DNA of 64,000 nucleotides, taken from Neoechinorhynchus agilis (taxonomy: Eukaryota; Animalia; Acanthocephala). Position numbers and translations under genes: made by a program. The notes beneath the pieces are model-generated. The model saw nothing but the letters and a program-made list of their open reading frames with translations. It was not told the DNA's origin and made no database searches. Positions 3,998-60,801 of the stretch are shown here, one piece after another; position 1 is the stretch's first letter; the number at the start of each line of letters is the position of its first letter. The stretch covers positions 13,866,784 through 13,930,783 of the forward strand of contig CM121341.1 in the NCBI GenBank assembly GCA_051530055.1. Reading direction: 5' to 3'.

Positions 3998-6900
3998 TTA
4001 TTTAATTGAATCTGTTGACACAAACCATTCTACTTCCGGTTTGATCATAACAATCTTATATCCCACAAGGACATCTCCCTTTTGAAACTGAAACCTATCC
4101 TCACTCCCAAAAGCCAAACCACAATCCTGCCCTTTCTGAACACTCGAGACATCATCCTTGAAATGTTTCATACTAGACAACTGTCCCCTATGAACGACTT
4201 CGTTGTCGTTGCGAATAACTTTGTACAAAGCATGTCTTCGTAGTGTTCCATTAAGACAACGGCATCCTGCAACAGACACAGCCCGAGATTTTCCTATATC
4301 CACCTGGTACACTTGCTGAACAACCGCTTCGCCCAATGCTTCTTCGGTTTCAACCGGAGTTACTCGTTCGTTCAACTGGTTTCTTATATCGTTAAAGAGA
4401 TGGTAGATGACTTGGTGAAGACTGACGGGGACGTTCAACGTGGAAGCCAATGCTAGAACATTGGTAGGAGCGCTAACGTTAAATCCATAGATAATCCCTA
4501 AAGAAAAACGGCGCTTAATATATACGCACCGAAACTTAATACCTTTTGCTGCATGAGCTCGCTCAACATCACCCATTGCTATTTCCCCGATCCCAGAATG
4601 AATCACTTCCAAATCAACCATTGTGCTCACGTATGTCTTAAATGAGTCCTCGATCGCTTCAAGACTACCCAATACATCAACTTATTGAATGGATTGACGT
4701 GAGTAGAGAAATTCAAAAAGTCAGAATACCTTTCATCACTATGGGAAGATAAGGTTTTTTTCGCTCCTGAACGATATGAGCGCGACCTGTGATCTTTCGA
4801 AAGACCGTCCCAGTCTCTCGTTTAATCTTCAATTCCTCTCTTCGCCTCTACGATCAAACCTTGCTTTTTGGTTAGCACAATACATACCTGTACTTCTTTA
4901 GATGTTCTTCTCTAACTCGATCAGCCGCCAAACCGTCAGAAATCTCTTTTTCCACAATAACTTTAGACGTTCTAAACGCTATAACCAAATCCATCTTTTT
5001 CTAAAAGTAGCTCAACCAATCAGGAAATGAACTTTGAGAATAGAATATTTCGATTCTTGACGATAAATTTACACGATTTGAAATATGGTTCTGTGAAGTT
5101 CGTGAGTTTTTACTACTCTTGTGAAAATTTTGAAAACAATTTCAAGTAAATAAATTCGATTTTTTTCTCACTTTATCTTCCACTTCGATTATGTCGTCTC
5201 CACTTTTGGGCGCTTTAGACCACCCAACGATCTGTACAGGCTCGCAAAGTTCCGTTTTCACCAATGGTTGCCTATCTTCGTTTAAAATCTGCCGCACGCG
5301 TCCACTAGTCGCTCCAGATACCAAGTAAGCTCCCTTCTTCAAAGTTCCTCGATCAACCAAAGCCGTGCATATCGGACTATTTTGTTGTTTGTAAAAATGT
5401 TTTCGAGTCCATCATACCCAAGTGTTTTATCGATTTTAGATTCAATTACGGTAGCTTCGACTAGACCAGTAGGGTCACCCTTTAATTCAAGAAGATCGGT
5501 CATCGTGAGAATCGCATTTAACAATTGATCCAGATTAATCTTCTGTTATAACCAATTTAACTTTTCAATTTCTCGCTCGAGGCAAATTTGATATCAAACC
5601 TTCAGTGCGGATATCTGTACTCCAATTATATCACCCCCTGATTCTTCTAATTGAACCCCGAATTGAAGTAGCGATTCTATCGTCATTTTCTAAAGAAATA
5701 TTCATACCGATTTCGCTTTGACAACAAAACCACACGAAATCAAACAATAACAATCTCAAAAAATTGCTGTCACTTTCAACAGTAGATTTTTTTAAATAAA
5801 AGAAATCGTTTTTAAATGTTACCGGAATTCAGGCCACTTCTAATGAAATCGAATCGTTCAACTCTAAGAATAAGTTTATGGTGTTGTTTTTCCGCGTGAG
5901 TTTAAGACTGCAGAAGCTCTTGGTCAGCAAAAATGATTCCTGTGAAATGTCCTCAAAGCATACTCATAATCAATGCACAAATAATAATTATAGATCTATT
6001 AAACCCTTTATATTTTTATTCTTCGCAGATATGAGCGATTTCTGCAGTCCCAAAAAACTTTCACAATTAATCAGCATCACAGTGTTTGCGATGGATATAT
6101 ACGATTTGAGGGTATTTGTACTTACAAGGTTGGCATTATTTTTATCGATTTTATTGATGGCCACGATGAATGGAACTTTTTAGTGAAGAGATGAATTAAT
6201 ATCGATTAAAAACTTAACCAAACCATTTGCATTTCTGATGTGCTGAAGTGATTCCACCGTCTGTGGCATAACCCCATCATCCGCAGCTACAACGAGAACA
6301 ACCAGATCAGTAACTTGAACACCACGAGCACGCATTGAACAGAACGCTGCATGCCCTGGTGTGTCAATAAAAACGATCTTCCTTTTAAAATGTTCATTAG
6401 ATTTCAATTCGACTATTTAAAGGCACGGTTTTACAAAAACGATACGTATTCATCTGAGAAATCTCACCGGTAAATGCTCCAATGTGCTGTGTGATTCCGC
6501 CAAACTCTTGATCTACCACGCGACTTTTCCTTAGACTATCCAGCAATGTTGTTTTTCCGTGGTCAACGTGGCCCATTATTGTAACTATCGGAGGCCGACT
6601 GATCAATTGAATCGATTCAGCCAAAGGGGGCGGTCTATAAATTAGATATTAAAAGGTTCATACGCTGGTCACTAAATTTACCTTCGATGAACGTCAACCG
6701 AAACTTTTGCAGTAGAAATGTTTGGTCGCTTAACGAATTGAAATCGGTAACCGCAAAGCGAAGCTATAGAGCCAATCACGGAGGGGTCTTCAATGCCTGA
6801 TCGTAACGTGATTTGTTAGGGCAAACATGATATTCAAGATAATGAGAAATAAATTACAATTTCTATGGCTTCCGAATTGAAAAACGACTATAGGTCAATG

Positions 6901-7555
6901 CTTTATTTGCAGTCAAAATAAACGAAATTTAACGATAACTATTTGAGATTCTAAATGCTCAACGGTACCACAATAGCTCTTAATGGCGGTCGAAACTTAG
7001 CGGTTACCGTATACACTACGAAAAAAACACTTCAACTCAATCGGTTCTATTTACTTGCACTTGTGTCACTGCAAGGATTTACAGAGTAATCGTAATAATG
7101 ATTAGGCTAAGCTTTTTGAAGGAAGAATTGGTTATTGGATCCAGAAAACGATCACCTCGGACTTACAAATTCGAAATATAAATGTCTAAATCAAACTAAC
7201 TTTTGTCGGGATCTTTCATAGTGCGCTCAACATCCAAGTAATCCAAGCACTCATTCAAATGACCTAAACTTTTCTCCGGTTGAAGTAATTCAATCTTTTA
7301 AGGACAGCAAAGTGCGTTACCGATTCCGAATCCGAGCGTTTGGGATAGCTCTTTTAAATTCATATCTCGATACACATTCACGGACGGTTTTTTCTTTTTT
7401 GCAGTGTACACAATTGGGACTACCTGAAAACCTTAGAGGAAATTAAGAAAATTGCAAATAAAAATATAACTTACCTTCCGCTTTTTTAAGCAAATTAAGC
7501 TCGTAAAAATTGGCCGCACGAATCGACGATAATGCCCGTTGAGTTGTGCGAGCAT
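3998..7555 (-). CDS. MTIF2: Mitochondrial translation initiation factor IF-2 (multi-exon)
   Basis: [71 protein letters not shown] and C-terminal LKHFKDDV/GQDCG-type motifs; exons joined by GT-AG introns (e.g. a ~55-nt intron in AFT/VELK); arginine-rich presequence-like start [15 protein letters not shown] at 7555. Confidence 0.95.
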
Positions 7556-8951: not shown

Positions 8952-9414
8952 ATGGCATCTGAATCGTAAGAAATTTGATTCCAGGCTCTCTTTTTCTAAT
9001 GTAAATTTTACATTGTTAAAAAGGCTCATTTCCAAACCGAAATCCGAAATGACAGCCGAGGAATTGGCTAAAAGAGAAGAGGAAGAGTTCAGTACAGGAC
9101 CTCTTTCCCTCCTCATGAACGCTGTCCGGACAAACTGTCAAGTATTGATAAACTGTAGAAACAATCGAAAACTGTTGGCTAGAGTTAAAGCATTCGATCG
9201 GCATTGTAACATGGTTCTCGAGAATGTAAGAGAACTTTGGATTGAGCATCCGAAATCAAAGAAAGGAGGGGATAAAGTTAAACCAATAAATCGTGAGAGG
9301 CATATTGGAAAGATGTTCCTAAGAGGAGATTCCGTCATTGTAGTGCTTAAGAACAATCCTGAGCTACATGAAAGCCATGGGCAAGCTCCAGATACTGAGC
9401 AAATGGAGATATAA
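8952..9414 (+). CDS. SNRPD2: Small nuclear ribonucleoprotein Sm D2
   Basis: [23 protein letters not shown] and [26 protein letters not shown]...[13 protein letters not shown]; exon 1 8952-8965 (MASES), GT-AG intron 8966-9023. Confidence 0.97.
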
Positions 9415-11369: not shown

Positions 11370-13145
11370 TTAGAGAAAATCCTTCGATATCATAGAGTTG
11401 CAGATGTGATGATTATAATCCCACGGATATTCGCGAAGAAACCTCGTCATTAATTGTTTTAAGGTTTTATGTACATGTTTTATTCGGGAATATGATCACC
11501 GTTTGTTTGAAGATTGAACTGTTCATTTTTGTTATGGCGGAAAATTGAATTCGGCACAATATTGGGCCTTTGCGAATAAAATGCATTCAATTTTCCGCCA
11601 TAACAAAACATCATGATCACCACAATTCCAACTCGAAGATTTATTATACACAAACAACATCTTCGTTACACCTACACTCATTCGGTAATATCCATAGCAA
11701 ATGGAATTCCGCGTCCAAGGCATTCGATAAGCTCCATAAAAACTATTGGCATATCTTCGCCGAGGCTATCGATCAGCACTTGCGAAAAGGCATCACTGAA
11801 CTGATCATTATCTTTATAGGCCGCAATGACGTCTTTTGCTCGAAACCCACTCACGAATTGGTGCAATGATTTCATTTGCTCAGAACGAGTGCAGCAATCG
11901 CAAAGTCCCTTGTTTCTACGCTTCTTTGCAGCAATGGTTTCGTTGCTATTGTCCTCTTTTTTTATGAGACTGAAAAGCTTAGAAAACCAAAACAGCAATG
12001 GGGATGGGTCAAGTAGTTGAACGTGACCGTTCTCGATTGCTCGGAGCCTTGATTTTAGTTCTTTCATCAATATCGCCTTGTACATCCGAAAAGCGTTCTT
12101 GGTGCAAGAAAAGCTTGTCTCGATTTGTTCGGCTGAATTGCTAGGCAGAATTGTTTGTGGAAGCCATATACTGTCGCTTAGCACAAAGTAGGATAGATCG
12201 CTTAATGTAATCGAAGGGTTGCCTTCAACGATTTTTAGGTCAATTATCTTGTGTGATTGATTAAAACCAAATTTTCCAATTCCCTGAGCTAAGTACGATT
12301 TGACTATACTAAATCGATATAAAGAGAAGGTGTCAATCAAGTATAATGTTCTTTTCTTAATAACACAAATACTATCGATAATTGATCATAATCGATATTC
12401 TATTGCGCTTTCTTGAAAACTTTATTGGTCTGATAATGACGTTTAGGTCTCATGTTAAGATCGATTCCCGAGCGATTGAATAAAAAGACGATATAACTAA
12501 TTAGTTAGCTACGAGTTTTACCTAAAGCAAGCTATAAAGATTTTAAGCAGTCAGATTGGGATTCGGAATAGTTGGTATTGGCAAAGACACTCCATGAACT
12601 TCATAAACCATGCGCTTCTTGTCTTCACTTAACTTCAAAATGTTCATCTTCTGACTAGATCCTCGTTCAATAAACATAAGAAAATCCTTGTCGGCCTTTA
12701 AATAACTGCAACTCTTAGGTAAAGCAATGGGTTCTTGTTCAAGGATTACGCCAGATTTCGTGCTGAGACAGATAAGGAATTGTAATTTAGAGTAACCTTT
12801 TAGACCCATGGTAACAGCAGTTATAGCGTTGGATGCCGTAACTCTTTTTGCCCTTCCAGGGAATACTTGCTTCCACAATTCATGGATCATGTTCGTTTTA
12901 ACATTTATGTGTATACAGTGAACGGCAGAATAGTGCTGGTCGTCTCGCGAGTGCTCACTTAAACAGATATAGCGAGACTCGTTATCATTGACGATATCGA
13001 CTAATTGAGCAATATTACATCGATGCCGAGTGTACCCGCTGACAAATTCGAGCCAATCATCATAATTACTACATCCTGATATAATCATCAAAGATTTGTC
13101 ATTGGAAAAAATAGACGTGTCCATTCGATGGCCGCAGTCAATCAA
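11370..13145 (-). CDS. Uncharacterised multi-exon protein (beta-rich N-terminal half, helical C-terminal half)
   Basis: Two long co-directional ORFs (200 and 220 aa) that can be joined in frame; the 3' end (11678 or 11370) and the start are uncertain. Confidence 0.65.
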
Positions 13146-14301: not shown

Positions 14302-17300
14302 ATGACGGCTACGCTTTCCATTGAGCTACTTCAAGAACTGCATAAATGTCTTAACTCAACGAAACGAAAGGTTCTTGAGGAATCCTACGAAGAAATCCGT
14401 CGAGCGGAAAAAGTGCGGGTGCTCGTGGACGTTTGTTGTGTACCCGATGGCACTGAAGAGCCTTCGTTGCAAATAAACTATCAATTACGAAGTTTCTGTG
14501 CTGTTTTGCTTCGTAAGGAATTGACCGATTTTCTAGTAGACGATCCGGAAAGCTATGTTAATCACCTGAGTCGCTTTTTTGCTTACTTTAGGACTCACTT
14601 AGACGAGATGAACGCTTACCGAGAATTCGGACGATCGATGAGTCAGGTTTTTGCGGCGACATTTCTGTTTAAGGATGATCACATTGACGATTTGCTTAAA
14701 TTGATGACCCAGTTTTTAATTGAGTGCCTTGAAGACATTAGAAATCCACAAATAGTTTTGATTGGTTTAGACATTTTTGAATGGAACAGTGGTGCTTTTG
14801 ATGAGTATTTGTCCGAACTGATTGAGCGCTTGGACGCAGCGCTGGCGAATATTCTGAAAAATCATGGAACTGAGCTGGGTGTTCATTGTGCTCGTGTGAT
14901 TGTTTCATTTGTAAAGTACTATGAAGGAAAAATGGAATATATTGGTCAAGTAACTCAGACAGCTATCCCTACCTATATTGAAAAAATCTCATTGAACATT
15001 ATGAACGAAGCGATGACGAGAACGCTTCTTGATCTTGTTGAAGATGAATTCGAGATTGTCAAAGGGTTCGTTGGTCAGATTGGAGAAATCGCGATTGTTG
15101 GAATTCAAAGTGGAAGTATAACAGACGAAGTGCATTGTATTTTGATTGAAGTTCTCGCTGATCTCGCAACAGGTTGGCCAAATGAATTCAATGAGAGTTT
15201 CTCCAGTTTTATTCCAACTATTCTGGCCGACTTACTGAATGTAATTACGCGATCGACATCACAATTCCAATTGGACGAATGGGAGGAGATTGATGATCCG
15301 AACGATGAAGTCGATCCAAATTCAATTTTTGTGACTGCCGAGACTGCTTTGGACCGAATATCTACTAGCATCGGTGGAGATATTATTTGGCCTGTGATCA
15401 ATAGACTTGTCTGGCCTGCGTTAACCGAAATTAATGGTAAAAGCGAACCATTAGACGATTGGACCAAAAAGTACGCGTCCTTATTGGCCATCGGCGTGGT
15501 TGGTGAAGGATGTCTTAATTTAATGGAAGGGAGTCTGAAGGAAATTCTTATTCACATTATCCGAAGTGCCGAATCTCACAGCGAACCGCGAGTTCGGTAC
15601 GCGTTGTGCAACACCGTTGGTCAAATGTGTGAGGACTTTTCTCCCGCTATTCAAATCGATTTTCACGACCTGATTTGTCCTCTCCTGATAAAGTACATTT
15701 GCGATCCTAGCAGTCTGAGGGTACGAACTCATGCCGTTTGTGCTCTTGGAAACTTCGTACAATCCTGCCCCAAGTATATTTTGGGATTATATATTCACGA
15801 GATGGCATCTACACTCTTAGCCGCTGTTCAATTAATGGATCTATCAGGCGCTTTTGGGGAGCAATGTTTTTATTCAGTATATTTGTTTACTCGTGAATAA
15901 CTGCAAACAAAGCATACCAAACCAACGAGCGTCTTTACTATTAATATGGGAATTAACTTTGAAATGTAAGACAAATGAATCGCTATCTGATTATCAGAAC
16001 TTATGAGAAAGTCCTTATCCATGCCATAGTTTTTAAAGCGTGCTTTTAGAAGATTGTACTATTTATACGTTATTGTTTCAGAGCATATTAAACCAAATGA
16101 ACTTTAGGTTTAATTCCGGATCCCTCAAGGCATTAAATAATGCGGGTTTCGTCTACTTCCCAGATAACTAAGAATTTTAAACGAAGTCTTTTCTCGTTTA
16201 TTCCCTGCCATTGGAATAACTCAAATGTAGCCACATTTTAATTGATTAATTTTCTCCTAACAATCAAAAGCACTGATCGATTCGATAGGTTTCGAGATGC
16301 TCAAAACAAGTGATCGGCGTTTACTTCTCGATAATTCCTTGAGCACAATGTCAAGATTAACCGAGCAGTCTAGCAATTTAATGGCTAGCTCCTACTCCGT
16401 CTTCATTCAGACGTTCCATCAGATTCTGAATGAAATAAACAGAGAATTGAATTCAGCCGTAGATTCGGACACTGATAGGATTGATGGCTTAAAGATGATT
16501 CGAGGTCGCGTTTTGGAGTGTATTACTCTTCTTGGTTTGGCTGTCGGTAAAGAGACGTTTATGCGAGACAACACCGAGGTAATCAATTTTCTTCTTAATG
16601 AGGAATCGAATGTGAAAGAAGATACTAGCAACGTTGAAGTTAATTTTCTGATCAATTGTTGGTCAAGATTATGCTCACTTCTAGGTTCTGATTTTTCTAA
16701 ATTTATACCTAAGCTATTGCCGATTGCTATTTCGATCGCGTCATTTAAAACCAAGGTAAATCTAATGGATGATCGTGAAGCTAAAGAATTTTTGGAAAAA
16801 GGCAATGATGTGACTTCAGGATGGTATTGTTTGTCTCTTGGTAAACAACAAAATCTTGCTCTCTCCACGGCTGGAATTGAGCTGAAACATCATGCGGTTA
16901 CTCTTATATGCACCTACTGTATGGAACTCGGATTCGAATTTGAACCATATGTTGAGCAAGTTAGAACGATCATGATTGATGCACTTAGGAAAGCGGACGT
17001 TACTGATCGGCTGTCAGTTCTAGACACCACTTAGGAAAAGGTGTTGCGATTCTTGGTACAAATCATAGCTAGAAAATCATCAGGAGTGATAAAATTTGAA
17101 TTGCGGTGATTATAATCCCCGGGTAAAAGACATTTCATATCAATAACATCACCACAATTCAAACTTGATGCATATGTTTAGAATTTCAAATCGCTAGTTG
17201 CAAGAGCAGTAGTACAAAAATGGACATTTCCTTAGGGTTAAAAAACACCCGAGTTTGGAATTCCGGTTTCGTGTAGATGTTTCTCATGAAATAATGCCAT

Positions 17301-18617
17301 AATCGGGGTTAGGTATCTTTTATTGAAAAATACGCGGTGCTCCTTTTTTGTAGAACACCGTTTTGTACACCTTTTGGCCACTCAATGAACTTTAGTTTCT
17401 CTTCACCCGACTAACTTACGTTCGCTTGCAGTAAAAAAACAGTATTCACCTCCATTAAAACGGCGGCAGCGGAATGTCTGCCTCATTTGCTTTCATGTGT
17501 TAGAAACCGTGAAAGTCTTTGCGAATTGACGAATGAATTCATCCAAGAACTGTGCCAAGCATGTTTTAACGAAAGTGAATACGACGTAAGGTCTGAACTT
17601 ATAGGTTCAATGAGTGAATGCACAGACAAATTTTTTTTCCGTGCCGAGAATGAATTCAACAATCTTAGAGAATGCGCTCTCAAATTGGAAGTTTATGACT
17701 TACTTTTGTCGACACTCGTTTCCAAACTTGACGGATACGTAAATTGTGGAGACAGAGGAGAACCGCGATCGGTTGAGCTTATTAAGATTTCAGATTGTGT
17801 TCATGTTCTGTTCAGATATCTTAAAAACGATTTTCTTGGCAGATTTAAACAAGACTTTTTACCCATTTACCTGAGTCTTCTTACATCAAATCAACCTTCA
17901 TATAACCGACAATGGTCATTGTGTTGTTATGGCGACGTCATATCTTATTGTGGACTTGGGGCTGCATTGGATATAGCTCCTAATATCGTACCGTACATCG
18001 CTCCGATGATTCAGGACGAACATCCGAACTCGAGACAAGCCTCATCGTATATCATTGGCCTTCTTGCACTTGACGTTGCTCCTCACAACGAAGAGATCAA
18101 GCGATTTGTTCAGTCATGTATCCCAGCTCTCCAGTCCGCTGCGACTGGACCTCAACGGCACTCAGCAATGAACCTAATGGCTACCGAAAACGCTGTGAGC
18201 GCGATTGGCAAAATCTTACTCGCTGATTTGGCTCCTAATAGAAGCTCACTGCTATCAGAATGGATACAATATCTACCAATTTGGGCTGATAGTGAGGAAT
18301 GTGAACATGTCTACTCGTTTTTATGCGAACTTATCGACCGGAGAGACCCGGTTGCTATGGGTGGACAAGATGAACCCAATCTACCGTATTTAATCCGTCT
18401 TATAGCCGAATGTCTTCTTCGTGAAGGTATTGACAGAAAAGAGAATACCATTAAGAAGGTAGCCCGTCTATTCGAAAAACTTTCTAGGGGAGAACAAGCT
18501 CAATGGAATTCTTGTCTTGCTGTGTTGAACGACCGTCATAAAACAGCTATAGACCAAGCCGTCGTTGATGCATCGCTGGTGGCCAACAAAGATCAATGGG
18601 AACATCAGAGAAAATAA
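14302..18617 (+). CDS. IPO5: Importin-5 / karyopherin beta-3 (HEAT repeats), interrupted by two TIR-bounded inserts
   Basis: AETALDRI, EPRVRYALCNTVGQMCEDF, RVRTHAVCALGNF, RGRVLECITLLGLAVGKETF, TAAAECLP, RQASSYIIG, ATENAVSAIGKI, LPIWADSEE motifs across three ORF blocks. Confidence 0.93.
15833..16287. other. TA-flanked, inverted-repeat-bounded insert 1 in the IPO5 coding sequence (453 nt removed)
   Basis: Left TAATGGATCTATCAGGCGCTTTTG vs reverse complement of right TATCGAATCGATCAGTGCTTTTG (18/24 by hand); excision leaving one TA gives CAA TTA GGT TTC GAG ATG in frame. Confidence 0.8.
16986..17433. other. TA-flanked, inverted-repeat-bounded insert 2 in the IPO5 coding sequence (446 nt removed)
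   Basis: Left TAGGAAAGCGGACGTTACTGATCGGCTG vs reverse complement of right TACTGCAAGCGAACGTAAGTTAGTCGGGTG (21/30 by hand); excision gives CTT AAA AAA ACA GTA TTC and corrects the frameshift. Confidence 0.82.
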
Positions 18618-18819
18618 ATGGCTGCTTCAAACCGTCATCAAAAGTATGAATATTTTTGAGAAATGCATTCAGATTCTTACACTCGAATGGCTATTTTAAT
18701 CGTAATCAATAGCGATTACGCTACGGTGCGTCGTACCCTTGTTTTATTTCATCTTCTTTTCGATAAGGGCGAAAGGAACCAATCATCAACTTGTATTCTT
18801 AAATAATTAATCTGAAAAA

Positions 18820-28670: not shown

Positions 28671-31534
28671 AAAAGTGAAATGAAACTTAATAGGAGATTA
28701 TGAGAGCTCAATGACCAAAGCAGCGTTTATCTGAAAGATACCAGTTTAGGAAATCTAAGACAAATGCGCGGTATTCATTTTGTGTCCATCAAAGAAATCA
28801 TATTTTCGTCCCTATTCGATAGATCTCCCATTGCAGAAAACGAACAAAATGGCGATCGAAAAACTGTCGTCCGCAGCCTGATGATATAGTTGCAGAAGTC
28901 TAATCAAATTATGCATGCTCTTCATAGCATGCTTGGGAAATTGGTTGGAACAACAGACGCCATTCGCGCCTAAAAGTGGTTAGTGAATTTCTAGAATCCA
29001 CACGCATACGGAAATTTTTCTAAATTGAAGAGAATCATTACTGAGAAAGAGAGAACCAAGCGTAAATAGGAGATGACAAGTGTGATAAAAATGGGACTTG
29101 GCGTTTGATACGAGAACTGACCCAAGTTATGCAATGGTTGAATCCTCGCTCCTAAAGGGTATAAGACTAGCCAATAGACACGTCTCAAGCACTCTGTGAT
29201 GTCTGGACATAGTGCTCTTCAGGGGCCCATATCAAGCCAAAAAGACTTCTGACGTGACGGGGTCATCGAAACGCAGTGATCGCTGAAATTCTAAGGGTGA
29301 TACCGGATGAACTTCTATAAATAATACTTTTGACAAAAGACTTCGAAATAGTACGTCTATTTTCAATTTGTTATGTGTATTTTTTGTTAAGCACTGGCAA
29401 TTTTAAGATAATGTTTGTGTCTTTGTGATTAAATGCAGCTACTTCACCCATGAACAACTTTTCTCGGTTGGCTCTAACATTATAGAAAAATCAGATTGTA
29501 ACAGACTGCTAACTGAAGCAAATATGGGCTTGCAAAACGGTGAATGTATGTTCAATGAGCTCTAACTGTTACATGAGCCCACGCTTTCTAACTTACAGCT
29601 GCTGCTCGTATTCTCCCGTCATCTCGGGACGACCTCATCAAATGAACTCTATGTAATTTTTACACGAAAGGTCGTCTATTCATTGACACTACACATATAT
29701 AATCAAAATCCAAGATTCGAAGACAAAAGCTATTCATTTGTAGTGATAAAATAAAGGAGGTGACATACTAAACTATCAAGAAAAAGGGTTGGTCTCATGC
29801 CCGTAAACCAAATTTTTATACTGTCCAACAAACATCGTTATAGTAAGATTTGAAACACTTGCCTCATTTGGAATGGACCAACTTTAAGCAATTGTCGATA
29901 TCGAATAATGCATCTACCGCCTCAATATCAGTGTTTTGTTGCTGTTGTTGAAAAACCGCTTGCTAGAAACAAACTTTATAGTCAAAACGAGAATAGACGA
30001 TAGAGTGCAAGGGAAGTTGTATTTATGCCAATGATCTTAAGTACCAATCATACAGAATTTGGTACAACGGACTAGAAAAAAGAGACGGAAATCTAGAATT
30101 CCATCGATGCGCTTCTACGAAAAGTCGCTATATGAATTGATTTGTTGTGTACGGGAAACGCAAGCAATCAGTCAACCTTGACTCCTAGCAGCAGTTTCTT
30201 GTCATAAAATGAATAAATTTAAGGTTGTTGAAATTTTAGGCGGCTTAGCACAAAAGCGACTCAGAGAATAGTCTCGAATTTTAAAATTAATTTAAGAATT
30301 GTACTTCGTAAAAAATTAAATCAGCATGATCCAGACTCTTTCTGATGAGGATTAATGGCAATTCCTGTCTGGAATGCGAGGACGGCTAGTCATTTTGTGT
30401 TTGGATGGGTGCACAAGTTCGTTGCAGAGATCCATCGTTCCAAATTGCACGATTAAATGACTCGCATCCGGAATGCCGTCAATATTTGTACGTTGATTGA
30501 AGAACGACTGTAGCTAAGAATATCCCTAAGATATAAAAGGATCAGTGGCGTGTCGAGCACTCAGCGCACTGCTTGCTTCGACGATGTGCAGCCGAGCATT
30601 CTTGGCAGGTTTGACAGCAGGTGTCTTGTTTTAAGACAAAACTGTGAGGCACTTCTCGCGGACGGCATTGCTACGGACAGGGTCGCCTTGACCGGAAATG
30701 TCTTTGAGACTTCACTCGCGACTCCAACGAATTAACATACAGCGTTTGCCTTTAAATTTTCCTACAAAGACAATATACAAAAGATGTATTTAGACTTTTG
30801 ATTACAAGTACCCACTTATAGATAATAGAAGTCTCGTGTTTGATCTTTTAGGCGATGTGGGGAACTTCTCATGTAAAAGTCTGAGATCAACACTATGAAT
30901 GGACCCTTTTTTCAATGAATTGATTTTTTAAGCGCAAGGGAACGTTTCCTTCGCATTATTGTCCCTTTTGGAGTCGAAACACATGGAATCGTAAATGATC
31001 CGCATTAATTTCAAGTCAAGACATTGGCGGTAGCGAGATAATGCAGTGTTCTGCTATCTATGGACTGGGAAATTGTTTCTCTGGAATTGAGTTTGGAAGA
31101 TGATTTTGTATGGCTCACTTCTTGAAAAGAAAACCTTTTCATTAATTATCGGTACATATTCCATGCAGATCACAAAGTTTTCCGGATCTGTCTTGGGCTG
31201 CCGGTTGTCTTAGGAGCTTCATTAGTCAATCAACAATTACCAAAATGAATTAACTTCCCCATATCTGCAATTACTATCGATGAACTTGGCCGTGAATAAA
31301 TACGAAATTAATACGAAGTTCAGAGGTAAATAAAACTCAAAATCAACTTGAGCTTCATCTTCAATGGCAAAATATCAACAAACAATCGCTCAATTTATAG
31401 GTATTACACATTTACTCAATAATCAATATTTTCCTTTCTGTTGACGGTCGAAATGACGTCGTTCAAAAATGCTCTAGAAAAACCGAGTGATTAGATAAAA
31501 GGTTGTAGAGAAGTGACTAAATCCGAACCGAAAA

Positions 31535-31888
31535 ATGAAAACCTTTCTCGTCTTTCTTGCTCTTTTCTCCGTGGTGGTTGCTGTCGTCCAGAAACGAGGA
31601 GCTTACGAGGCAGCTTCTCCCTCAGAACTCGCAACTTACGTCCGTGGGGTGGCGTGGGCAATGACCTCGAGAACTTGTGGAGTAGATATTGCCAATCTTC
31701 CACCGACACTTAAGAACGGACAAACTCTTCTTATTCAGTTCAAAGTGACCAGTCCAGTCATCGAAGACATGATCTATGAAATAGAAGTAGACGTGGAACC
31801 AGCGAGATTTGTTCTCCTAAGTCTGAATTACCTAAATCCACAGCTTTACAAAGTCGTGGATGCGTCTTGTGCTAAAGGATCACAATGA
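31535..31888 (+). CDS. Small secreted protein, possibly a divergent cystatin-like fold
   Basis: Signal peptide MKTFLVFLALFSVVVA, two Cys, helix followed by beta-strand pattern; no QxVxG motif, so the fold call is weak. Confidence 0.7.
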   Translation: MKTFLVFLALFSVVVAVVQKRGAYEAASPSELATYVRGVAWAMTSRTCGVDIANLPPTLKNGQTLLIQFKVTSPVIEDMIYEIEVDVEPARFVLLSLNYLNPQLYKVVDASCAKGSQ

Positions 31889-32106
31889 ACCACATAATGT
31901 GAAAGTGACTAGTTTGAAGATGTCTGAGATTAGTACTTATCGCTTCTTAAACATTAAAATTTATTAATTCATTTATACTCAATGAGATCACAGTTGCGAG
32001 GCCCAATTAAAGCACTTAGTGTTTTCCTTTTAAAAATTAGGTGCAGCATAATGATATTTTTGACATAAAGAAAACATCGCATAAAGACCAATCGTTTATT
32101 TATTAC

Positions 32107-35893: not shown

Positions 35894-38800
35894 TGATGTA
35901 AATAACCTGGCAAAATCCACGAAAATGCTCTGGAATTCGTCCACTTAGCTAATTTTTATTTGACGGAACATAAAGCACGAATAAGAGGCTCAAAAAGTTT
36001 TGTGAGCATATATAAAGGATGCATCTCATTAACTGTCTTTTTAGCTGGCAATCACACTTGACAATAGTCTCTAAGGCGAAAGTTTCAGTTGTTAACAGAC
36101 TTGGACGTGTAGTGGATGCATGAGGGGAAAACTTTATGCAGCACCAAAAAACTGACAGCTTGTATACTTTCAATTATTAGCAAATTTCGTTTAAATAAGA
36201 TGGATAAACAGACGCATAATATAGTATATTATAATGTCCTGGTAATTCGCAATAATCGAACCGCTTTCTTGGATGACCGATTTGTACGTTCCTCCGATTC
36301 CACTCATTGAGATTTTTCTTAGATTATTATTATTATTCTTGAACGATGTTAGATTTTGCATTATTTTAAGAGCGAACAAAGGCGTAAATACTGAATGGTA
36401 AGGCATATACAAGGCTTTTATTTGTAGTCTTGATTGAAAAAATTGGAAAGACCAACGTGATATTTGCTCATATTATTCGGTAAGTTTTAGTTAAATATCA
36501 TGCAAGAATGTCCCAACATCGGGTTTTACTCCAATTAGTCTATAATGCATTCTTTCAATCATTTTCAGTAGAGTGATTTGTCTTGAAAGGGGACGAGCTT
36601 TTAAAGGTACAAAATGGAAAATCAAATGCTGACTTTTTCACACTGCATTTGTTTGCTGGAACACATTACTTTGTATCATAGAGAATTGTCGTCGGGGTGA
36701 ATTTGATTCGAGTTTGGCGATGTTTTTCCCCCGGATTGTTGTTGGTGTTGATTATTTATTTTAAAATATTTCGTAAGCATCCTTAGCGATTTCCAATCGA
36801 CAGGAGAAGGAAAAACACCGTATGGACTTCGGACAAGCATCAATAATACAGGCTGAGGCTAATTTACGAAGGAGATTGGTAATGGAGGCAATATACATCA
36901 CAGGGAATGTAAGCATGGAGGGTAACAAAGCGAATCATACGCTAGTACTTCCGAAAATTCTTCACAAAATAAAACCAAAACGTTAGATCACCGCAGCTTG
37001 TACGTCGAACCCGCGCATCCACGCCTATAGTCCAGTTTTGACTTTAGCTTAATTTGTAGACATAACTGAAGAGGTAAGCAAAAAACTTACGATATATTTT
37101 AAAATAAATGATTAACATCAACAACAATCCGAGGGAAAAGCATCGCCAATGTCGAAAAATTACTTTGTGTTCGCAAAACTCTTCGTTCGCGGAAAATATA
37201 TGTTGTTGTGTAGATATCCATTTATGAAGTAATTATGATGGTGAACTGAAGGAAAAAAATTATGAATATATTAATCAGAATTTTCGACCAATGCGTTGGT
37301 CTTCTTCAGTGATTGTCAGGAGAGGAAAATACAAGTAAGCTTTGTCAAATGTCTATGGATTTTTTGAATTTATCTTTTCAGACATAAGGAATCGTGAATT
37401 TTATTCGTACTATGGAACGTGAAACTAAGCGGATTTCCATCGCTCATGGTTCATGTTTGATAGATTTTCTCATGAAAATGCTTTGCAGATTTTCTAGAGC
37501 TGAAACAGTTCTTTAAGGAAATTAGAGTGCGTCCCATTTAGCATCATTTAATAAGGTCAGTTTGTTCCATGGTCATGTTAGGAAAAACTTATCATTTTTG
37601 AATTAGTCAAACGGACAAAAATCAGTCTATTAAAAACGGAATGGGGAAATTTTGTTCTTAGTTAAAAACGAACGCTATCAAAGTCATTGTATTTGCGTTT
37701 CATCAAATTTTTACACCATGCTTGATTTGAATCCGAAGCGATCACTGAGAAATAGTTTCCGAGCCGTGTTATTCATGCTGTTGAAAACTATATTTAAAAA
37801 ATCTAATGTTTTCACTTCCAATATCGCTAATAATAAAATCAAAGTTCCCGCAATATGAATTAATGTCTCTCTAAGGATCAAGATATAGCTTTCTCCGTGA
37901 CCCTTATACCACCGTAAGGGATTTACTTATCTTGTGCGTTTTGTCAGCGTCTAGCCATTTTGCAAACACCCACATACAACACTGTATGCACTTGCATAAG
38001 ACGAGTGGGAAAACAAGACTGTAGCGTTTCACATCTCGAAAGGTGATGTAAATAACCTGGCAAAATCCACGAAAATGCTCTGGAATTCGTCCACTTAGCT
38101 AATTTTTATTTGACGGAACATAAAGCACGAATAAGAGGCTCAAAAAGTTTTGTGAGCATATATAAAGGATGCATCTCATTAACTGTCTTTTTAGCTGGCA
38201 ATCACACTTGACAATAGTCTCTAAGGCGAAAGTTTCAGTTGTTAACAGACTTGGACGTGTAGTGGATGCATGAGGGGAAAACTTTATGCAGCACCAAAAA
38301 ACTGACAGCTTGTATACTTTCAATTATTAGCAAATTTCGTTTAAATAAGATGGATAAACAGACGCATAATATAGTATATTATAATGTCCTGGTAATTCGC
38401 AATAATCGAACCGCTTTCTTGGATGACCGATTTGTACGTTCCTCCGATTCCACTCATTGAGATTTTTCTTAGATTATTATTATTATTCTTGAACGATGTT
38501 AGATTTTGCATTATTTTAAGAGCGAACAAAGGCGTAAATACTGAATGGTAAGGCATATACAAGGCTTTTATTTGTAGTCTTGATTGAAAAAATTGGAAAG
38601 ACCAACGTGATATTTGCTCATATTATTCGGTAAGTTTTAGTTAAATATCATGCAAGAATGTCCCAACATCGGGTTTTACTCCAATTAGTCTATAATGCAT
38701 TCTTTCAATCATTTTCAGTAGAGTGATTTGTCTTGAAAGGGGACGAGCTTTTAAAGGTACAAAATGGAAAATCAAATGCTGACTTTTTCACACTGCATTT

Positions 38801-40193
38801 GTTTGCTGGAACACATTACTTTGTATCATAGAGAATTGTCGTCGGGGTGAATTTGATTCGAGTTTGGCGATGTTTTTCCCCCGGATTGTTGTTGGTGTTG
38901 ATTATTTATTTTAAAATATTTCGTAAGCATCCTTAGCGATTTCCAATCGACAGGAGAAGGAAAAACACCGTATGGACTTCGGACAAGCATCAATAATACA
39001 GGCTGAGGCTAATTTACGAAGGAGATTGGTAATGGAGGCAATATACATCACAGGGAATGTAAGCATGGAGGGTAACAAAGCGAATCATACGCTAGTACTT
39101 CCGAAAATTCTTCACAAAATAAAACCAAAACGTTAGATCACCGCAGCTTGTACGTCGAACCCGCGCATCCACGCCTATAGTCCAGTTTTGACTTTAGCTT
39201 AATTTGTAGACATAACTGAAGAGGTAAGCAAAAAACTTACGATATATTTTAAAATAAATGATTAACATCAACAACAATCCGAGGGAAAAGCATCGCCAAT
39301 GTCGAAAAATTACTTTGTGTTCGCAAAACTCTTCGTTCGCGGAAAATATATGTTGTTGTGTAGATATCCATTTATGAAGTAATTATGATGGTGAACTGAA
39401 GGAAAAAAATTATGAATATATTAATCAGAATTTTCGACCAATGCGTTGGTCTTCTTCAGTGATTGTCAGGAGAGGAAAATACAAGTAAGCTTTGTCAAAT
39501 GTCTATGGATTTTTTGAATTTATCTTTTCAGACATAAGGAATCGTGAATTTTATTCGTACTATGGAACGTGAAACTAAGCGGATTTCCATCGCTCATGGT
39601 TCATGTTTGATAGATTTTCTCATGAAAATGCTTTGCAGATTTTCTAGAGCTGAAACAGTTCTTTAAGGAAATTAGAGTGCGTCCCATTTAGCATCATTTA
39701 ATAAGGTCAGTTTGTTCCATGGTCATGTTAGGAAAAACTTATCATTTTTGAATTAGTCAAACGGACAAAAATCAGTCTATTAAAAACGGAATGGGGAAAT
39801 TTTGTTCTTAGTTAAAAACGAACGCTATCAAAGTCATTGTATTTGCGTTTCATCAAATTTTTACACCATGCTTGATTTGAATCCGAAGCGATCACTGAGA
39901 AATAGTTTCCGAGCCGTGTTATTCATGCTGTTGAAAACTATATTTAAAAAATCTAATGTTTTCACTTCCAATATCGCTAATAATAAAATCAAAGTTCCCG
40001 CAATATGAATTAATGTCTCTCTAAGGATCAAGATATAGCTTTCTCCGTGACCCTTATACCACCGTAAGGGATTTACTTATCTTGTGCGTTTTGTCAGCGT
40101 CTAGCCATTTTGCAAACACCCACATACAACACTGTATGCACTTGCATAAGACGAGTGGGAAAACAAGACTGTAGCGTTTCACATCTCGAAAGG
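35894..40193. repeat. Head-to-tail tandem duplication, 2 x 2150 bp (35894-38043 and 38044-40193)
   Basis: Identical text and ORF translations at an offset of exactly 2150; no differences seen by eye. Confidence 0.97.
36790..36930 (+). mobile_element. Penelope-like GIY-YIG endonuclease C-terminal remnant (second copy at 38940-39080)
   Basis: HRMDFGQASIIQAEANLRRRLVMEAIYI pattern. Confidence 0.6.
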
Positions 40194-42179: not shown

Positions 42180-42212
42180 GTGTTCATTAATTACATGACG
42201 TATAATTTTAAT

Positions 42213-42452
42213 AAGTATCTATGTGCGGCCTTTTGCACAGTTGATAATTTTCATTGGGCACGCGTTCCCACCGATCTGGTTCAGGGAAGGGCATAAAATC
42301 ACTTAATACCTTGAAACATACGGTTATGAGTTTGTACATTCCTCCGGAACCAGATCAGTGGGGCTGCGTGCCCAAGGAAAATTATCAGCCGTGCAAAAGA
42401 CAGCACATAGATGCTGAATAAAAAAAGTTACCGGCTGGCCAGTCTTCAAAAA
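42213..42452. mobile_element. Hairpin element family A (about 70-bp inverted arms plus 3' tail)
   Basis: Arm tatctatgtgcggccttttgcacagttgataatttt... pairs with ...aaaattatcagccgtgcaaaagacagcacatagat; flanked by tataa(t/c)tttaat direct repeats. Confidence 0.8.
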
Positions 42453-43920
42453 TATAACTTTAATCTTCGCATAATGGCTTGGCAGGAAAAAGAACCGGTT
42501 TTGATCACCGAGAATCTTGGATTAAGACTTTCAATGGCCAGTTGTTTTGAACTTAAAAAGATGCAAAATAATTGCGTTCCGCATAATCCAGAAAAAGAAA
42601 ATTAATTAGTTCAAATCATTAGGCTAATAAATTTTCAACCGACATCGATTCGCAATGTAGGTGATTATTTAATTGGTGGTGAACGTAATTCAAGTTTGTA
42701 CAAAGGATTCCTCACCCGTCGTTAGCGAACTAACCGTGTTTATCGGCAGATTGCTATCATCTAATTAAATGAAATCGAATCCGCAAAGGAGAGTTAGTCG
42801 ATGATAATGCCCGGCGACTTCTGAATTTTAATTAGCGTAGTTTTTGATCATTCTTCAATAATAGAATATTGATTATCTATTCTTCAATAAGGTCTACCTG
42901 CGCAATGCCGGATAAACTGGGTTGTTAAGAGTAAACGGTAATTAATTTCTGAGTCATGGTATCAAAAGTAATAAGTTGAAAATAAGATTATTGCTCAGCA
43001 AATTAAATTTGTGAACAGGATACGAAATCTAATTCTCATGATTCCATAAGTGAAGCCATTGAAACTAATTCAATGGTTTTCTTTGGCGTCGAGTAAGATT
43101 TTCTGTAACATGGTTTTAAATCTTCATTTAGATTTTAAGCACTGATATTGATTGTAGGCGATGTGTATTCGATAATGAACTAAAGAACAAAGCATTAACG
43201 TCAAAGCAAGAACCATGAAGTGTAGTTGTGTTACGTTTCGTTCATATTGACGAAGATTTAAGCACCTCGTTTATAATGTTATGAAGTTAAAGTATTCTTG
43301 AATAGTTTTTATTCGCACAACAATATGTTTTGGTGATTTATTTATCAATGCAAAATAGAAAGATTATCCAAAATGCCGCATGAATTTCTGATTATTACAG
43401 AAAGACGACAATTTCGCATTGTTGTGGTAAAAGATAATAATCGATAAGATAGATGTCCTTAAGTAAAAATGTATAAAGTTGATTATGCCATGGACATTCG
43501 TTGTAAAATCACGTTTCTGAGGAGAACGTTTTGATTAGTCATCGAATAATGGTCAACATGACCGACCAGACTACGAATATCGGTAAACCAATTTGCGCCG
43601 GGAGTGGATGACGGGTCCGTTCGGGTTTGAAAGTTTGTGGTTCTTGTTTGAAGGGGAGTTTGCTAGGTCGACACCTAAAGAAGAATATAAATCATCAGAC
43701 TATTCGTCATTATCTCGATTTTTTACCCTCTTCATGTATTCATCCCATATTCAACTTTGCTCCCTACGACCGAAAACTTGACTTCTGGGCGGAAACGAGC
43801 TCCCGTGCCCACGGCAAATCATGGATGTGATCACCTTATGTCTCCTTTCGCTAAATCACATTGAAATTGGCAAAGGATATGTTTCTATGTCTTGGTCGCA
43901 ATTTGAGCGGTTCAGATTCT

Positions 43921-44152
43921 TACATCCCCTGCTCGACTTTTTGGCATGAAGCCACACCGAATTCTTACATCAGAGAAGTGATCGAACCATTTAGCCTCTT
44001 ATGCATACGGTAATGAGTTTCTACATCTCTCCGGATTCTCAGATACCTCCAGGAGGCGGGATTTATCAGTGAGTTTCCACCCTTCCGTTGTATTACTCTC
44101 TAATGTAAAAGATCGGTGTGGCTTCATGCCAAAAAACCGAGGAAGGGATGTA
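43921..44152. mobile_element. MITE family C, TA-flanked, TIRs of about 50 bp (Tc1/mariner-like)
   Basis: TAcatcccctgctcgactttttggcatgaagccacaccga vs reverse complement of tcggtgtggcttcatgccaaaaaaccgaggaagggatgTA. Confidence 0.85.
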
Positions 44153-44159
44153 ATAATCT

Positions 44160-56780: not shown

Positions 56781-56900
56781 TTGAATAATTTGAGACAAAA
56801 ATGCAAAATCTGAAGACAATCTGAAGGAATTCCGGAGCATATTCGCCATTATGATAACTAAAGGAAACATAATTTAATGCGTTCAAATTAAAACTTCCGT

Positions 56901-60470: not shown

Positions 60471-60801
60471 AGTGCGGTCCATAATTATGAAGTGTTGAGA
60501 CAATCCGTGAGAAATGGAACACAGAACCATTTGATATGCGTGCATCAAAGTTCTGTCCCTTTGTTAGTGGCACTAATTTCCTTAAATGCCGTTTACGTAT
60601 CATGAACTCTTCTTCCTTGCAAATCATACAGATGAAGTCAGGTAAGGCACAAGATTGTGCCGAAATTTTGGATTCAATAAAAAATTAATTTTTACGCCAT
60701 AAACAAGCATGAATAGTTCAATTTTCAAACAGATTATAAGTTTGTACATACGTGAGGAGAGGCTTCCTTGCGAAATATTTCCATTCAATTAAATATGTTT
60801 T

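What the first reader, a model, noticed from the sequence alone, without database searches (positions are those of the whole stretch)
16986..17433. IPO5 insert 2: second independent TA/TIR insert in the same essential gene
The 446-nt insert shifts the frame. One-TA excision yields MIDALKKTVFTSIKTAAAE, the same length as the recalled MVPLLKFYFHDGVRVAAAE. Its TIR (21/30) is unrelated to that of insert 1. Two unrelated disabling insertions in an otherwise intact importin are hard to explain as pseudogene decay. A good-looking canonical pair (CT|gtcagt...ttgcag|T) also exists and would add 9 residues, which makes this the most discriminating test site.
Basis: partly seen in the sequence, partly recalled or inferred. 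Interest (0 to 1): 0.85.

Follow-up and report, generated by a model that had tools for sequence, protein, structure and literature searches.

The report
Transposon-like intron inside a worm importin gene
A 446-base insert with inverted-repeat ends splits the importin-5 gene of the thorny-headed worm Neoechinorhynchus agilis; it is most likely a transposon-derived intron, and it belongs to a group of such inserts that break the published gene models.

Summary
The window is Neoechinorhynchus agilis (Acanthocephala). Positions 16986-17433 interrupt an otherwise intact importin-5 reading frame. Removing 446 nt restores the length seen in 83 of 86 homologues, including Pomphorhynchus, Seison and a 46%-identical relative. 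The insert ends carry an imperfect inverted repeat in register with those boundaries (P about 0.0008 per random segment).

It is not an ordinary old intron. No relative has an intron at this site; P. laevis has one six codons downstream. It is also not shown to be DNA-excised. Its 3' end is a textbook splice region (ACTAAC, pyrimidines, CAG). GenBank's RNA-seq-guided model uses GT 17013 to AG 17431, which keeps 27 insert bases as nine extra residues.

Three other long interruptions in the window have the same terminal-repeat architecture: IPO5 insert 1, a NUBP1-like gene and an innexin intron. The innexin intron is flanked by GT-AG. At insert 1 and NUBP1 the homology-defined ends are not GT-AG, and the GenBank models stop inside the insert. 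All seven short introns (42-64 nt) are canonical.

Best reading: a MITE/introner-like intron removed from RNA. The donor is unresolved between 17013 (about 0.45) and the precise junction (about 0.33). RNA-seq junction counts would settle it.

The parts
14302..15833 (+). Importin-5 (IPO5/Kap-beta3-like) coding block 1, up to the homology-defined end. GenBank reads on to the stop at 15898-15900 as a separate 532-aa gene.
15834..16286 (+). Insert 1 (453 nt, TA at both ends). Inverted-repeat arms at 15839-15856 and 16265-16281. No intron is annotated here, and the gene model is split at this point.
16287..16985 (+). IPO5 coding block 2 (the GenBank model P0001 starts at ATG 16297).
16986..17433 (+). 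Insert 2 as flagged: 446 nt plus one TA. It is absent at the protein level from 83 of 86 homologues.
16987..17012 (+). Left end of the insert that stays in the mRNA if the annotated donor is used. With T 17432 it encodes the nine extra residues RKADVTDRL.
16991..17013 (+). Left inverted-repeat arm (AAGCGGACGTTACTGATCGGCTG).
17013..17431 (+). Canonical GT-AG intron (419 nt, GTCAGT...CAG, phase 2) used by GenBank protein ACOME3_003283.
17089..17169 (-). Internal 19-22-bp hairpin. It gives a weak mir-36_2 resemblance that is below the family threshold and is probably not a miRNA.
17404..17427 (+). Right inverted-repeat arm (CACCCGACTAACTTACGTTCGCTT). It contains the branch-point consensus ACTAAC at 17410-17415.
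17428..17431 (+). GCAG, the 3' splice site. It is shared by the canonical intron and by the precise TA...AG excision.
17432..18620 (+). IPO5 coding block 3 up to the stop codon. KKTVFTSIKTAAAEC is orthologous to RCTIFDSVKITAAEC (P0011) and RFYFFDSVRSAAAES (P. laevis).

Best explanation
Insert 2 is a lineage-specific, non-autonomous DNA-transposon-like (MITE/introner-like) insertion into a previously uninterrupted stretch of the N. agilis importin-5 coding sequence. It now works as a spliceosomal intron.

Shown:
- It is an insertion relative to all relatives.
- It has terminal inverted repeats in register with the homology-defined ends.
- Its right end carries ACTAAC, then 15 nt of mostly pyrimidines, then CAG.
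- An in-frame GT (17013) to AG (17431) pair exists and is the deposited gene model.

Inferred:
- The pre-mRNA is spliced at 17012|17432.
- The first 27 nt of the element therefore stay in the mRNA as a 9-residue extension (RKADVTDRL) of a HEAT-repeat turn.
- The terminal stem brings the two ends of this unusually long intron together, in a genome whose ordinary introns are 42-64 nt.

My split for how the insert is handled:
- annotated donor at 17013: about 0.45
- precise junction at 16985|17432: about 0.33
- anything other than RNA-level removal: about 0.1
- an ordinary intron with a coincidental repeat: about 0.1
For: - Identity and gene model: (N. agilis CM121341.1; P0001 is 100% identical over 100% of my canonical translation). 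The annotation was made with BRAKER2 using mRNA-seq (PMC12690905).
- Insertion status. Of 86 homologues, 83 lack exactly nine residues, including P. laevis KAI0983856, Seison KAI3384766 and the 46%-identical P0011.
- Lineage-specific position: no intron here in mite, Seison or tick. P. laevis has a GT-AG intron six codons downstream, in phase 1, and N. agilis lacks that one.
- Terminal repeat: (P about 0.01; 0.0008 with the register requirement).
- Same architecture, with canonical splice sites flanking the arms, in the innexin intron 47252-47643.
- The window is rich in foldback/MITE-like elements, including a 450-bp one present twice.
- Splice signals compare well with seven confirmed short introns: GTR... 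at the 5' end, CTAAT/CTAAC branch points, WAG|G at the 3' end.
Against: - The donor GTCAGT has C at +3. All seven other donors seen here have A or G at +3.
- The nine extra residues have no counterpart in any close relative.
- By analogy with the innexin intron, the donor should lie about 5-8 nt upstream of the left arm. That is the precise junction at 16986, where there is no GT.
- At two sister inserts (IPO5 insert 1 and NUBP1) the RNA-seq-guided models stop inside the insert, although weak in-frame GT-AG pairs exist. Canonical junction reads were therefore probably not seen there.
- An in-frame GT-AG solution arises by chance in about 73% of random inserts at this site, so its existence proves little.
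- AUGUSTUS could have predicted this intron without read support.
- No second copy of the element was found in the 64 kb. I could not search the rest of the genome.
Confidence: 0.45

Rival explanations
1. The element is the same, but it is removed precisely. Splicing is non-canonical and hairpin-assisted. It uses the normal branch point and AG at 17431, with a non-GT 5' junction at 16985|16986 (TA...AG). The product has the homologue-length sequence ...MIDALKKTVFTS.... N. agilis would then have a class of long introns bounded by inverted repeats whose ends need not be GT-AG, like Amoebophrya introner elements, Fritillaria introns or Euglena intermediate and nonconventional introns.
For: - The precise junction restores the length seen in 83 of 86 homologues and in both acanthocephalan relatives.
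- The arms sit 5-6 nt inside the homology-defined ends, the same layout as the innexin intron, where GT and AG occupy those positions.
- NUBP1-like gene: the homology-defined intron starts with a good GTAAAT and has CCTAAAC plus a pyrimidine tract, but ends in TC. No AG is in phase with that donor, and the only in-frame GT-AG pair is weak (GTTTCC...AAAAG). That pair would put about 20 residues into the conserved AVIL|TTPQ strand. GenBank's model P0178 instead runs into the in-frame TGA and loses the conserved C-terminal third, including CPxC.
- IPO5 insert 1 and the mtIF2-like gene are also cut off at long inserts. All seven short canonical introns in the window give homologue-length junctions.
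- Transcriptome BUSCO exceeds genome BUSCO (71.0% against 58.4% eukaryota).
Against: - I had no read-level evidence.
- Non-GT donors are very rare in animals outside tunicates.
- BRAKER can fail for other reasons, for example the fusion of NUBP1 with the upstream Dus-like gene in P0178.
- A HEAT-repeat turn can tolerate nine extra residues.
- The mtIF2 long insert lacks a strong terminal duplex.
Confidence: 0.33
2. Programmed DNA excision, like a ciliate IES. The insert is present in germline DNA and is cut out precisely, leaving one TA, from somatic chromosomes, so that somatic transcripts never contain it.
For: - Both IPO5 inserts have TA at both ends. Each is a unique sequence with short, degenerate terminal inverted repeats, and precise removal restores the frame.
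- The assembly came from pooled whole worms, which are rich in germ cells.
- Annotation breaks at these inserts, as would happen if transcripts lacked them.
Against: - The insert ends carry spliceosomal signals: ACTAAC and CAG here, CTAAC...AAAAG in insert 1, GTAAAT in NUBP1, and both GT and AG in innexin. A DNA-excision system has no need for these.
- The NUBP1 insert is not flanked by TA.
- The TA reading here is ambiguous.
- The terminal bases (TAGGA / TACTG) do not fit TAYAG and do not match each other.
- DNA elimination has not been reported in Acanthocephala (my knowledge; nothing was found).
Confidence: 0.06
3. An ordinary, older spliceosomal intron. Its terminal complementarity is coincidental, or it comes from a MITE that landed inside an existing intron. 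The nine residues are then just a lineage-specific loop insertion, or the result of a donor shifting 27 nt downstream.
For: - Canonical signals and the deposited model.
- The N. agilis protein has several other lineage-specific insertions of 5-13 residues.
- P. laevis has an intron only 20 nt away, in a region where tick, mite and Seison have none. This hints at a shared acanthocephalan intron.
- Inverted repeats are abundant in this genome.
Against: - The orthologous codons KKTVFTS / RCTIFDS / RFYFFDS lie downstream of the N. agilis intron but upstream of the P. laevis intron, so the positions are not the same.
- The left arm lies outside the canonical intron.
- Three other long interruptions show in-register arms.
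Confidence: 0.1
4. The insert is not removed. The importin gene is broken or is expressed in pieces, as in the deposited split models, and another paralogue supplies the function.
For: GenBank annotates the locus as separate genes. I could not search the rest of the genome for a second IPO5.
Against: Three long reading frames (532, about 230 and 395 codons) are free of any other stop or frameshift and align along the whole length of importin-5. The same holds for the NUBP1 C-terminal block, which has no start codon of its own.
Confidence: 0.05

Closest known systems
Amoebophrya introner elements (Farhat et al. 2021, PMC7789003)
   Same: Introns carry 8-20-nt inverted repeats at their 5' and 3' ends, plus short direct repeats that overlap the exon/intron boundary. 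They are predicted to form a hairpin that joins the exon ends. They occur in a fast-evolving parasite, and a minority of canonical introns have the same layout.
   Different: Those are in a dinoflagellate, number in the thousands, are grouped into repeated families and have RNA-seq-proven non-canonical junctions. Here there are four examples in 64 kb of an animal genome, each a unique sequence, the direct repeat is only 2-3 nt, and the junctions are unverified.
MITE-derived non-canonical introns of the tunicate Fritillaria borealis and relatives (Henriet et al. 2019, as cited in PMC7789003; PMC13326754)
   Same: It is an animal lineage with a compact genome. The introns come from non-autonomous DNA transposons and the major spliceosome is adapted to non-GT/AG ends.
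   Different: Fritillaria introns mostly follow an AG-A(N) pattern and make up the majority of introns. In this window all seven short introns are GT-AG, and only the long ones with terminal repeats are in question.
Introners of Micromonas and Aureococcus (Huff et al. 2016, as summarised in PMC7789003 and PMC11282704)
   Same: DNA-transposon-like elements with terminal inverted repeats and target-site duplications insert into exons and are spliced at canonical sites carried by, or created with, the element.
   Different: Those form high-copy families of constant length with near-identical copies. I could not show a family here.
Euglena intermediate and nonconventional introns (PMC12501133)
   Same: There is a series from GT-AG through one-sided to fully non-canonical ends, with base pairing between the intron ends as the common feature. 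The window shows the same series by homology: innexin GT-AG, NUBP1 GT-TC, insert 2 TA-AG, insert 1 neither.
   Different: A different kingdom. The euglenid pairing sits at fixed positions and the introns are abundant. Nothing here has been tested at the RNA level.
Paramecium TA-bounded internal eliminated sequences
   Same: Unique-sequence inserts in coding DNA, with TA at both ends and degenerate inverted termini. Precise removal restores the reading frame.
   Different: IESs are removed from DNA by a domesticated transposase, have a TAYAG terminal consensus and need no splice signals. This insert has a perfect branch point and CAG, and no consensus at its termini.
Stowaway / Tc1-mariner-type MITEs
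   Same: Small size, no reading frame, terminal inverted repeats and possibly a TA duplication.
   Different: The outermost 4-5 nt of the two ends do not match, the arms are only about 75% alike and need gaps, and no other copy has been found.

Membership tests
U2-type GT-AG spliceosomal intron | GT at the 5' end and AG at the 3' end, joining the exons in frame with no stop codon | tested here: met
   17013 GT ... AG 17431 is the only GT-AG pair nearby that works. It is identical to GenBank P0001.
U2-type GT-AG spliceosomal intron | Branch-point consensus and pyrimidine tract 10-40 nt upstream of the AG | tested here: met
   ACTAAC at 17410-15, followed by TTACGTTCGCTTGCAG.
U2-type GT-AG spliceosomal intron | Spliced reads across the junction | not testable with these tools
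No transcript-derived protein was in the databases.
TIR DNA-transposon-derived MITE | Terminal inverted repeats at the ends of the insertion | tested here: met
   Arms 16991-17013 and 17404-17427: 21 matches with 2 gaps, P about 0.01, or 0.0008 in register. However, the outermost 5 nt do not match.
TIR DNA-transposon-derived MITE | Target-site duplication flanking the element | tested here: inconclusive
   TA/TA is only 2 nt. An AAA register is an equally valid alternative.
TIR DNA-transposon-derived MITE | Multiple related copies in the genome | tested here: not met
   There is no other copy in the 64-kb window and no similarity to insert 1. The remaining 46 Mb could not be searched.
TIR DNA-transposon-derived MITE | Empty site in related sequences | tested here: met
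   At the protein level the site is uninterrupted in P0011, P. laevis, Seison, tick and mite.
Introner / transposon-derived intron | Lineage-specific intron position in a conserved gene, with inverted repeats at both ends and a direct repeat over the boundary | tested here: met
   The same layout occurs in three other interruptions.
Introner / transposon-derived intron | Many near-identical copies acting as introns in unrelated genes | tested here: not met
   The four examples share no sequence. A genome-wide test was not possible.
Non-canonical (non-GT/AG) intron class | Transcript junctions at non-GT/AG boundaries | not testable with these tools
   Only indirect evidence: homology-defined ends are TA..AG (insert 2), GT..TC (NUBP1) and neither (insert 1), and the GenBank models are cut off at insert 1 and NUBP1.
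Ciliate-type IES / programmed DNA elimination | Insert absent from somatic DNA, leaving a clean junction | not testable with these tools
   I had no access to reads.
Ciliate-type IES / programmed DNA elimination | TA boundaries with a conserved TAYAG-like inverted terminal consensus | tested here: not met
   The ends read TAGGA and TACTG (reverse complement). Insert 1 reads TAATG and TATCG. The NUBP1 insert has no TA at its 3' boundary.
Importin-5 / Kap-beta3 (host gene) | Full-length collinear similarity to IPO5 orthologues | tested here: met
   E 7e-85 to the P. laevis orthologue, and 655 library proteins with E of 1e-10 or better; alignment runs along all three coding blocks.

The most novel reading that the evidence does not exclude
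Neoechinorhynchus agilis has a class of long interruptions in essential genes that are bounded by inverted repeats and removed precisely at boundaries that need not be GT-AG. The removal would be by hairpin-assisted non-canonical splicing or, less likely, by DNA excision. Insert 2 would then be taken out at 16985|17432, giving the homologue-length importin. Part of the 'missing' or fragmented gene content reported for this genome would then be an annotation artefact of these introns.
Probability: 0.35. Interest if true: 0.85.

Novelty: new member of a known kind. Interest (0 to 1): 0.62.

Why it matters
Intron gain from transposons is documented mainly in protists, and among animals in tunicates. 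An acanthocephalan example would show intron gain after massive intron loss in a 46-Mb parasite genome. In this gene, Seison keeps one intron, P. laevis about sixteen, and N. agilis has two at positions neither of them shares.

There is also a practical point. At least three conserved genes in this one window (importin-5, NUBP1, mtIF2) are split or cut short in the deposited annotation exactly at such inserts. Gene counts, BUSCO 'losses' and expression analyses for this species may therefore be biased.

If the junctions prove to be non-canonical, this would be a second, independent animal lineage with relaxed splice-site rules, and one that can be tested directly with existing public RNA-seq.

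Tried and rejected
- Copies of the insert: BLAST of the insert against the window found none.
- Known RNAs in the intron: Rfam gave nothing at gathering threshold. There was only a sub-threshold mir-36_2 hit on the antisense hairpin, whose seed and stem length do not fit a miRNA.
- Structure of the whole intron: the fold is no more stable than shuffled sequence (z = -0.03). Only the terminal stem stands out.
- Rebuilding neighbouring gene models from annotated product lengths: the GT-AG path search timed out at first, then gave a unique answer only for the LSM gene.
- Exact-protein look-ups: no record for window ORFs at 32107, 56130 and 53444, or for P0011.
- Searching with P0011 found no further acanthocephalan relatives and no DNA for it.
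- Tandem duplication as the origin of the intron: unit 1 (LRKADVTDR) against unit 2 (LKKTVFTSI) is only 12/27 at the nucleotide level by my own count. I judged this not convincing.
- Intron sliding from the P. laevis position: rejected, because the orthologous codons lie on opposite sides of the two introns.
- Sense against antisense duplex energies, to separate RNA-level selection from transposon repeats: no asymmetry.
- Existence of an in-frame GT-AG pair as evidence for canonical splicing: uninformative, since 61-73% of random inserts offer one.
- Paper supplements held no splicing-factor or importin information.
- Literature searches found nothing on introners, unusual introns or DNA elimination in Acanthocephala.
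Full report
**What the window is.** A search with the translated reading frames returned a 633-aa GenBank protein, ACOME3_003283 of Neoechinorhynchus agilis (Acanthocephala). It is 100% identical over 100% of my query. The locus is CM121341.1 of assembly GCA_051530055.1. The genome paper describes a 46.2-Mb assembly from pooled whole worms. It was annotated with BRAKER 2.1.5 using mRNA-seq from 74 worms (PMC12690905).

**The gene.** An importin-5 / Kap-beta3 orthologue lies on the + strand in three long open blocks: 14302-15900, 16261-17034 and 17433-18617. GenBank splits it into a 532-aa single-exon gene, which ends at a stop inside 'insert 1', and the 633-aa gene.

**Checking the observation.**
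- TA is at 16986-87 and 17432-33. Deleting 16988-17433 (446 nt, which shifts the frame) gives ...MIDALKKTVFTSIKTAAAE.
- Reading through the insert stops at TAG 17032-34.
- A GT-AG pair (GCT|GTCAGT at 17013, TTGCAG|T at 17431) is in frame and adds RKADVTDRL. This is exactly the deposited model.
- All eight first homologues lack those nine residues.
- An exhaustive HMMER search of the representative library found the real relatives: P. laevis KAI0983856 (33% identity), Seison nebaliae KAI3384766, and a 345-aa UniParc fragment, P0011 (46% identity).
- Over the same span, 83 of 86 homologues have exactly nine fewer residues than the annotated N. agilis protein. P0011 reads ...LRSLRCTIFDSVKITAAEC and P. 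laevis reads ...IPLLRFYFFDSVRSAAAES.
- The '21/30' inverted repeat needs two gaps; ungapped it is 9/30. It is nevertheless in the top 1% of random segments of the window. Both arms start 5-6 nt from the homology-defined ends, and only 0.08% of random segments combine that score with that register.
- Two cautions. The deletion register is ambiguous: TA gives ALKKTVF, while an AAA register gives ALRKTVF, which fits P0011 slightly better. And no second copy of the insert exists in the window.

**Is it an old intron?** No relative has an intron here.
- The mite gene is uninterrupted across the site.
- Seison has a single intron, far downstream.
- The tick has none nearby.
- P. laevis has a 2.7-kb GT-AG intron six codons downstream, in phase 1 within the Ser codon of FFD|S.
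- The orthologous codons (KKTVFTS / RFYFFDS) lie after the N. agilis intron but before the P. laevis one. The two introns are therefore not at the same position, and N. agilis has no intron at the P. laevis site.

The insert is therefore best read as an N. agilis-lineage insertion into continuous coding sequence.

**Signals for removal.** The right arm of the repeat contains a perfect branch-point consensus, ACTAAC (17410-15). Fifteen mostly pyrimidine bases and CAG follow. This 3' splice site serves both the canonical intron and the 'precise' excision written as 16986-17431 (TA...AG). That argues for the spliceosome rather than a DNA-excision system.

The donor is the open question. GTCAGT at 17013 has C at +3, whereas the seven other donors I could define all have A or G there. 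It also lies downstream of the left arm, so the arm would remain in the mRNA.

**Context from the rest of the window.** I defined seven short introns by alignment to conserved proteins:
- LSM: 58 nt
- Rpt2: 44, 51, 46 and 42 nt
- mtIF2: about 64 and 48 nt

All seven are GT-AG. Five give the exact homologue length; the 64-nt mtIF2 intron gives one residue more, and the LSM intron was placed from the annotated product length rather than by alignment.

The long interruptions are different.
- **IPO5 insert 1** (15834-16286, TA at both ends). In-register arms at 15839-56 and 16265-81. Its homology-defined ends are not GT-AG, and no intron is annotated.
- **NUBP1-like gene, minus strand.** A 114-nt insert (56189-56076) contains an in-frame TGA. 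It begins with a good GTAAAT and has CCTAAAC plus a pyrimidine tract and a 17-20-bp terminal stem, but it ends in TC. No AG is in phase with that donor. The only in-frame GT-AG pair is a nested, weak GTTTCC...AAAAG (54 or 57 nt), which would leave about 20 residues inside the conserved AVIL|TTPQ strand. GenBank's model P0178 uses neither. It reads into the TGA and drops the conserved C-terminal third.
- **Innexin intron** (47643-47252, minus strand). It has 28-nt arms that start 8 nt after a canonical CAG|GTACAC and end 4 nt before TCAAAG|T.

Terminal duplex energies of all four long interruptions are in the top 0.3-2.5% of random segments. A fifth long interruption, in mtIF2, has no strong duplex and no single GT-AG solution that I could find by eye. 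The 253-aa GenBank model that covers the mtIF2 region is short enough to suggest that it ends in or before this insert, but I did not retrieve its sequence.

The window also holds many unrelated foldback or MITE-like elements, one of them 450 bp long and present twice.

**Interpretation.** Insert 2 belongs to a class of lineage-specific interruptions, bounded by inverted repeats, in conserved genes. The most economical origin is insertion of small non-autonomous DNA elements. The closest described parallels are the introner elements of Amoebophrya, which have inverted repeats at both intron ends, short direct repeats over the boundaries, and both canonical and non-canonical ends (PMC7789003). 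Other parallels are Fritillaria's MITE-derived introns, Micromonas and Aureococcus introners, and Euglena's intermediate and nonconventional introns.

How insert 2 is removed today cannot be decided without reads.

For the annotated GT-AG intron:
- the signals are complete;
- the deposited model uses it;
- a HEAT-repeat turn can absorb nine residues.

For the precise junction:
- the homologue length;
- the innexin-like geometry, which places the expected donor at 16986;
- the RNA-seq-guided annotation fails at two sister inserts, although weak canonical options exist there. This is what one expects if the real junction reads were non-canonical and were filtered out.

An in-frame GT-AG pair is expected by chance in about 73% of random inserts at this site, so its presence carries little weight.

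My probabilities are:
- about 0.45 canonical donor
- about 0.33 precise non-canonical splicing
- about 0.06 DNA excision
- about 0.10 ordinary intron with a coincidental repeat
- about 0.05 not removed

**Verdict.** The finding is real and was well described. Its cautious interpretation, an independent transposon-like insert that must be taken out, is supported. The TA/IES flavour is not. It is a new member of a known kind (transposon-derived, introner-like introns) in a phylum where none has been reported. There is roughly a one-in-three chance that it marks a non-canonical removal system in an animal. Public RNA-seq and genomic reads can decide this in an afternoon.

Noticed in passing
window 14302-18620: GenBank splits one importin-5 gene into two models: a 532-aa model that reads into insert 1 up to a stop, and a 633-aa model that starts at ATG 16297.
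   Followed up: yes
window 15834-16286: IPO5 insert 1 is 453 nt with TA at both ends and 18-nt inverted arms 5 nt inside each end. Precise removal gives the homologue length. It has CTAAC...AAAAG near its right end but only poor in-frame donors.
   Followed up: partly
window 56076-56189 (minus strand); gene about 55734-56870: A NUBP1-like gene is interrupted by a 114-nt insert that contains an in-frame TGA. The insert has a good 5' GTAAAT, a terminal stem and no in-phase AG. GenBank model ACOME3_003295 (452 aa) is fused to an upstream Dus-like gene and stops at the TGA, which loses the CPxC-containing C-terminus.
   Followed up: partly
window 47252-47643 (minus strand): An innexin intron of 392 nt has 28-nt inverted arms just inside canonical GT and AG. 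This is the same architecture as the IPO5 inserts, but with normal splice sites.
   Followed up: partly
window 4001-7555 (minus strand): A mitochondrial IF2-like gene has two short canonical introns and a long interruption of about 464 nt (5549-6012). That interruption has a canonical-looking CAG at its 3' end, no in-phase GT and no strong terminal duplex. The GenBank model covering this region has only 253 aa.
   Followed up: partly
window 8966-9023; 61314-62078: Ordinary introns are very short (42-64 nt) and canonical. The Rpt2 gene has four of them, the first directly after the ATG.
   Followed up: yes
window 36707-37156 and 38857-39306: Two copies of a 450-bp element with 71-nt terminal inverted repeats lie 2150 bp apart. 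Its size is similar to that of the IPO5 inserts, but the sequence is unrelated.
   Followed up: no
window 42206-42423; 58593-58765; 43911-44162; 58346-58532; 59787-59926; 60796-60916; 11527-11608: There are many unrelated foldback or MITE-like inverted repeats (arms 24-80 nt) in the intergenic parts of the window.
   Followed up: no
window 17087-17170 (minus strand): A 19-bp hairpin inside insert 2 gives a sub-threshold mir-36_2 hit (21 bits against a gathering score of 46). The seed differs and the loop is 37 nt, so it is probably not a miRNA.
   Followed up: yes
window 16982-16992 and 17028-17038: An exact 11-nt direct repeat, CACTTAGGAAA, spans the left junction of insert 2 and recurs 46 nt downstream. 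It is unexplained.
   Followed up: no
L003 about 29230-31906 (P. laevis WNNJ02001979.1): The P. laevis orthologue has about 16 introns over 38 kb, while Seison has one and N. agilis two. The intron nearest to insert 2 is six codons downstream, in phase 1.
   Followed up: yes
protein P0011 (UniParc UPI00079D5144): The closest relative of this importin (46% identity) is a 345-aa fragment of unknown origin with no contig on record. It could be an acanthocephalan sequence deposited under another organism.
   Followed up: partly
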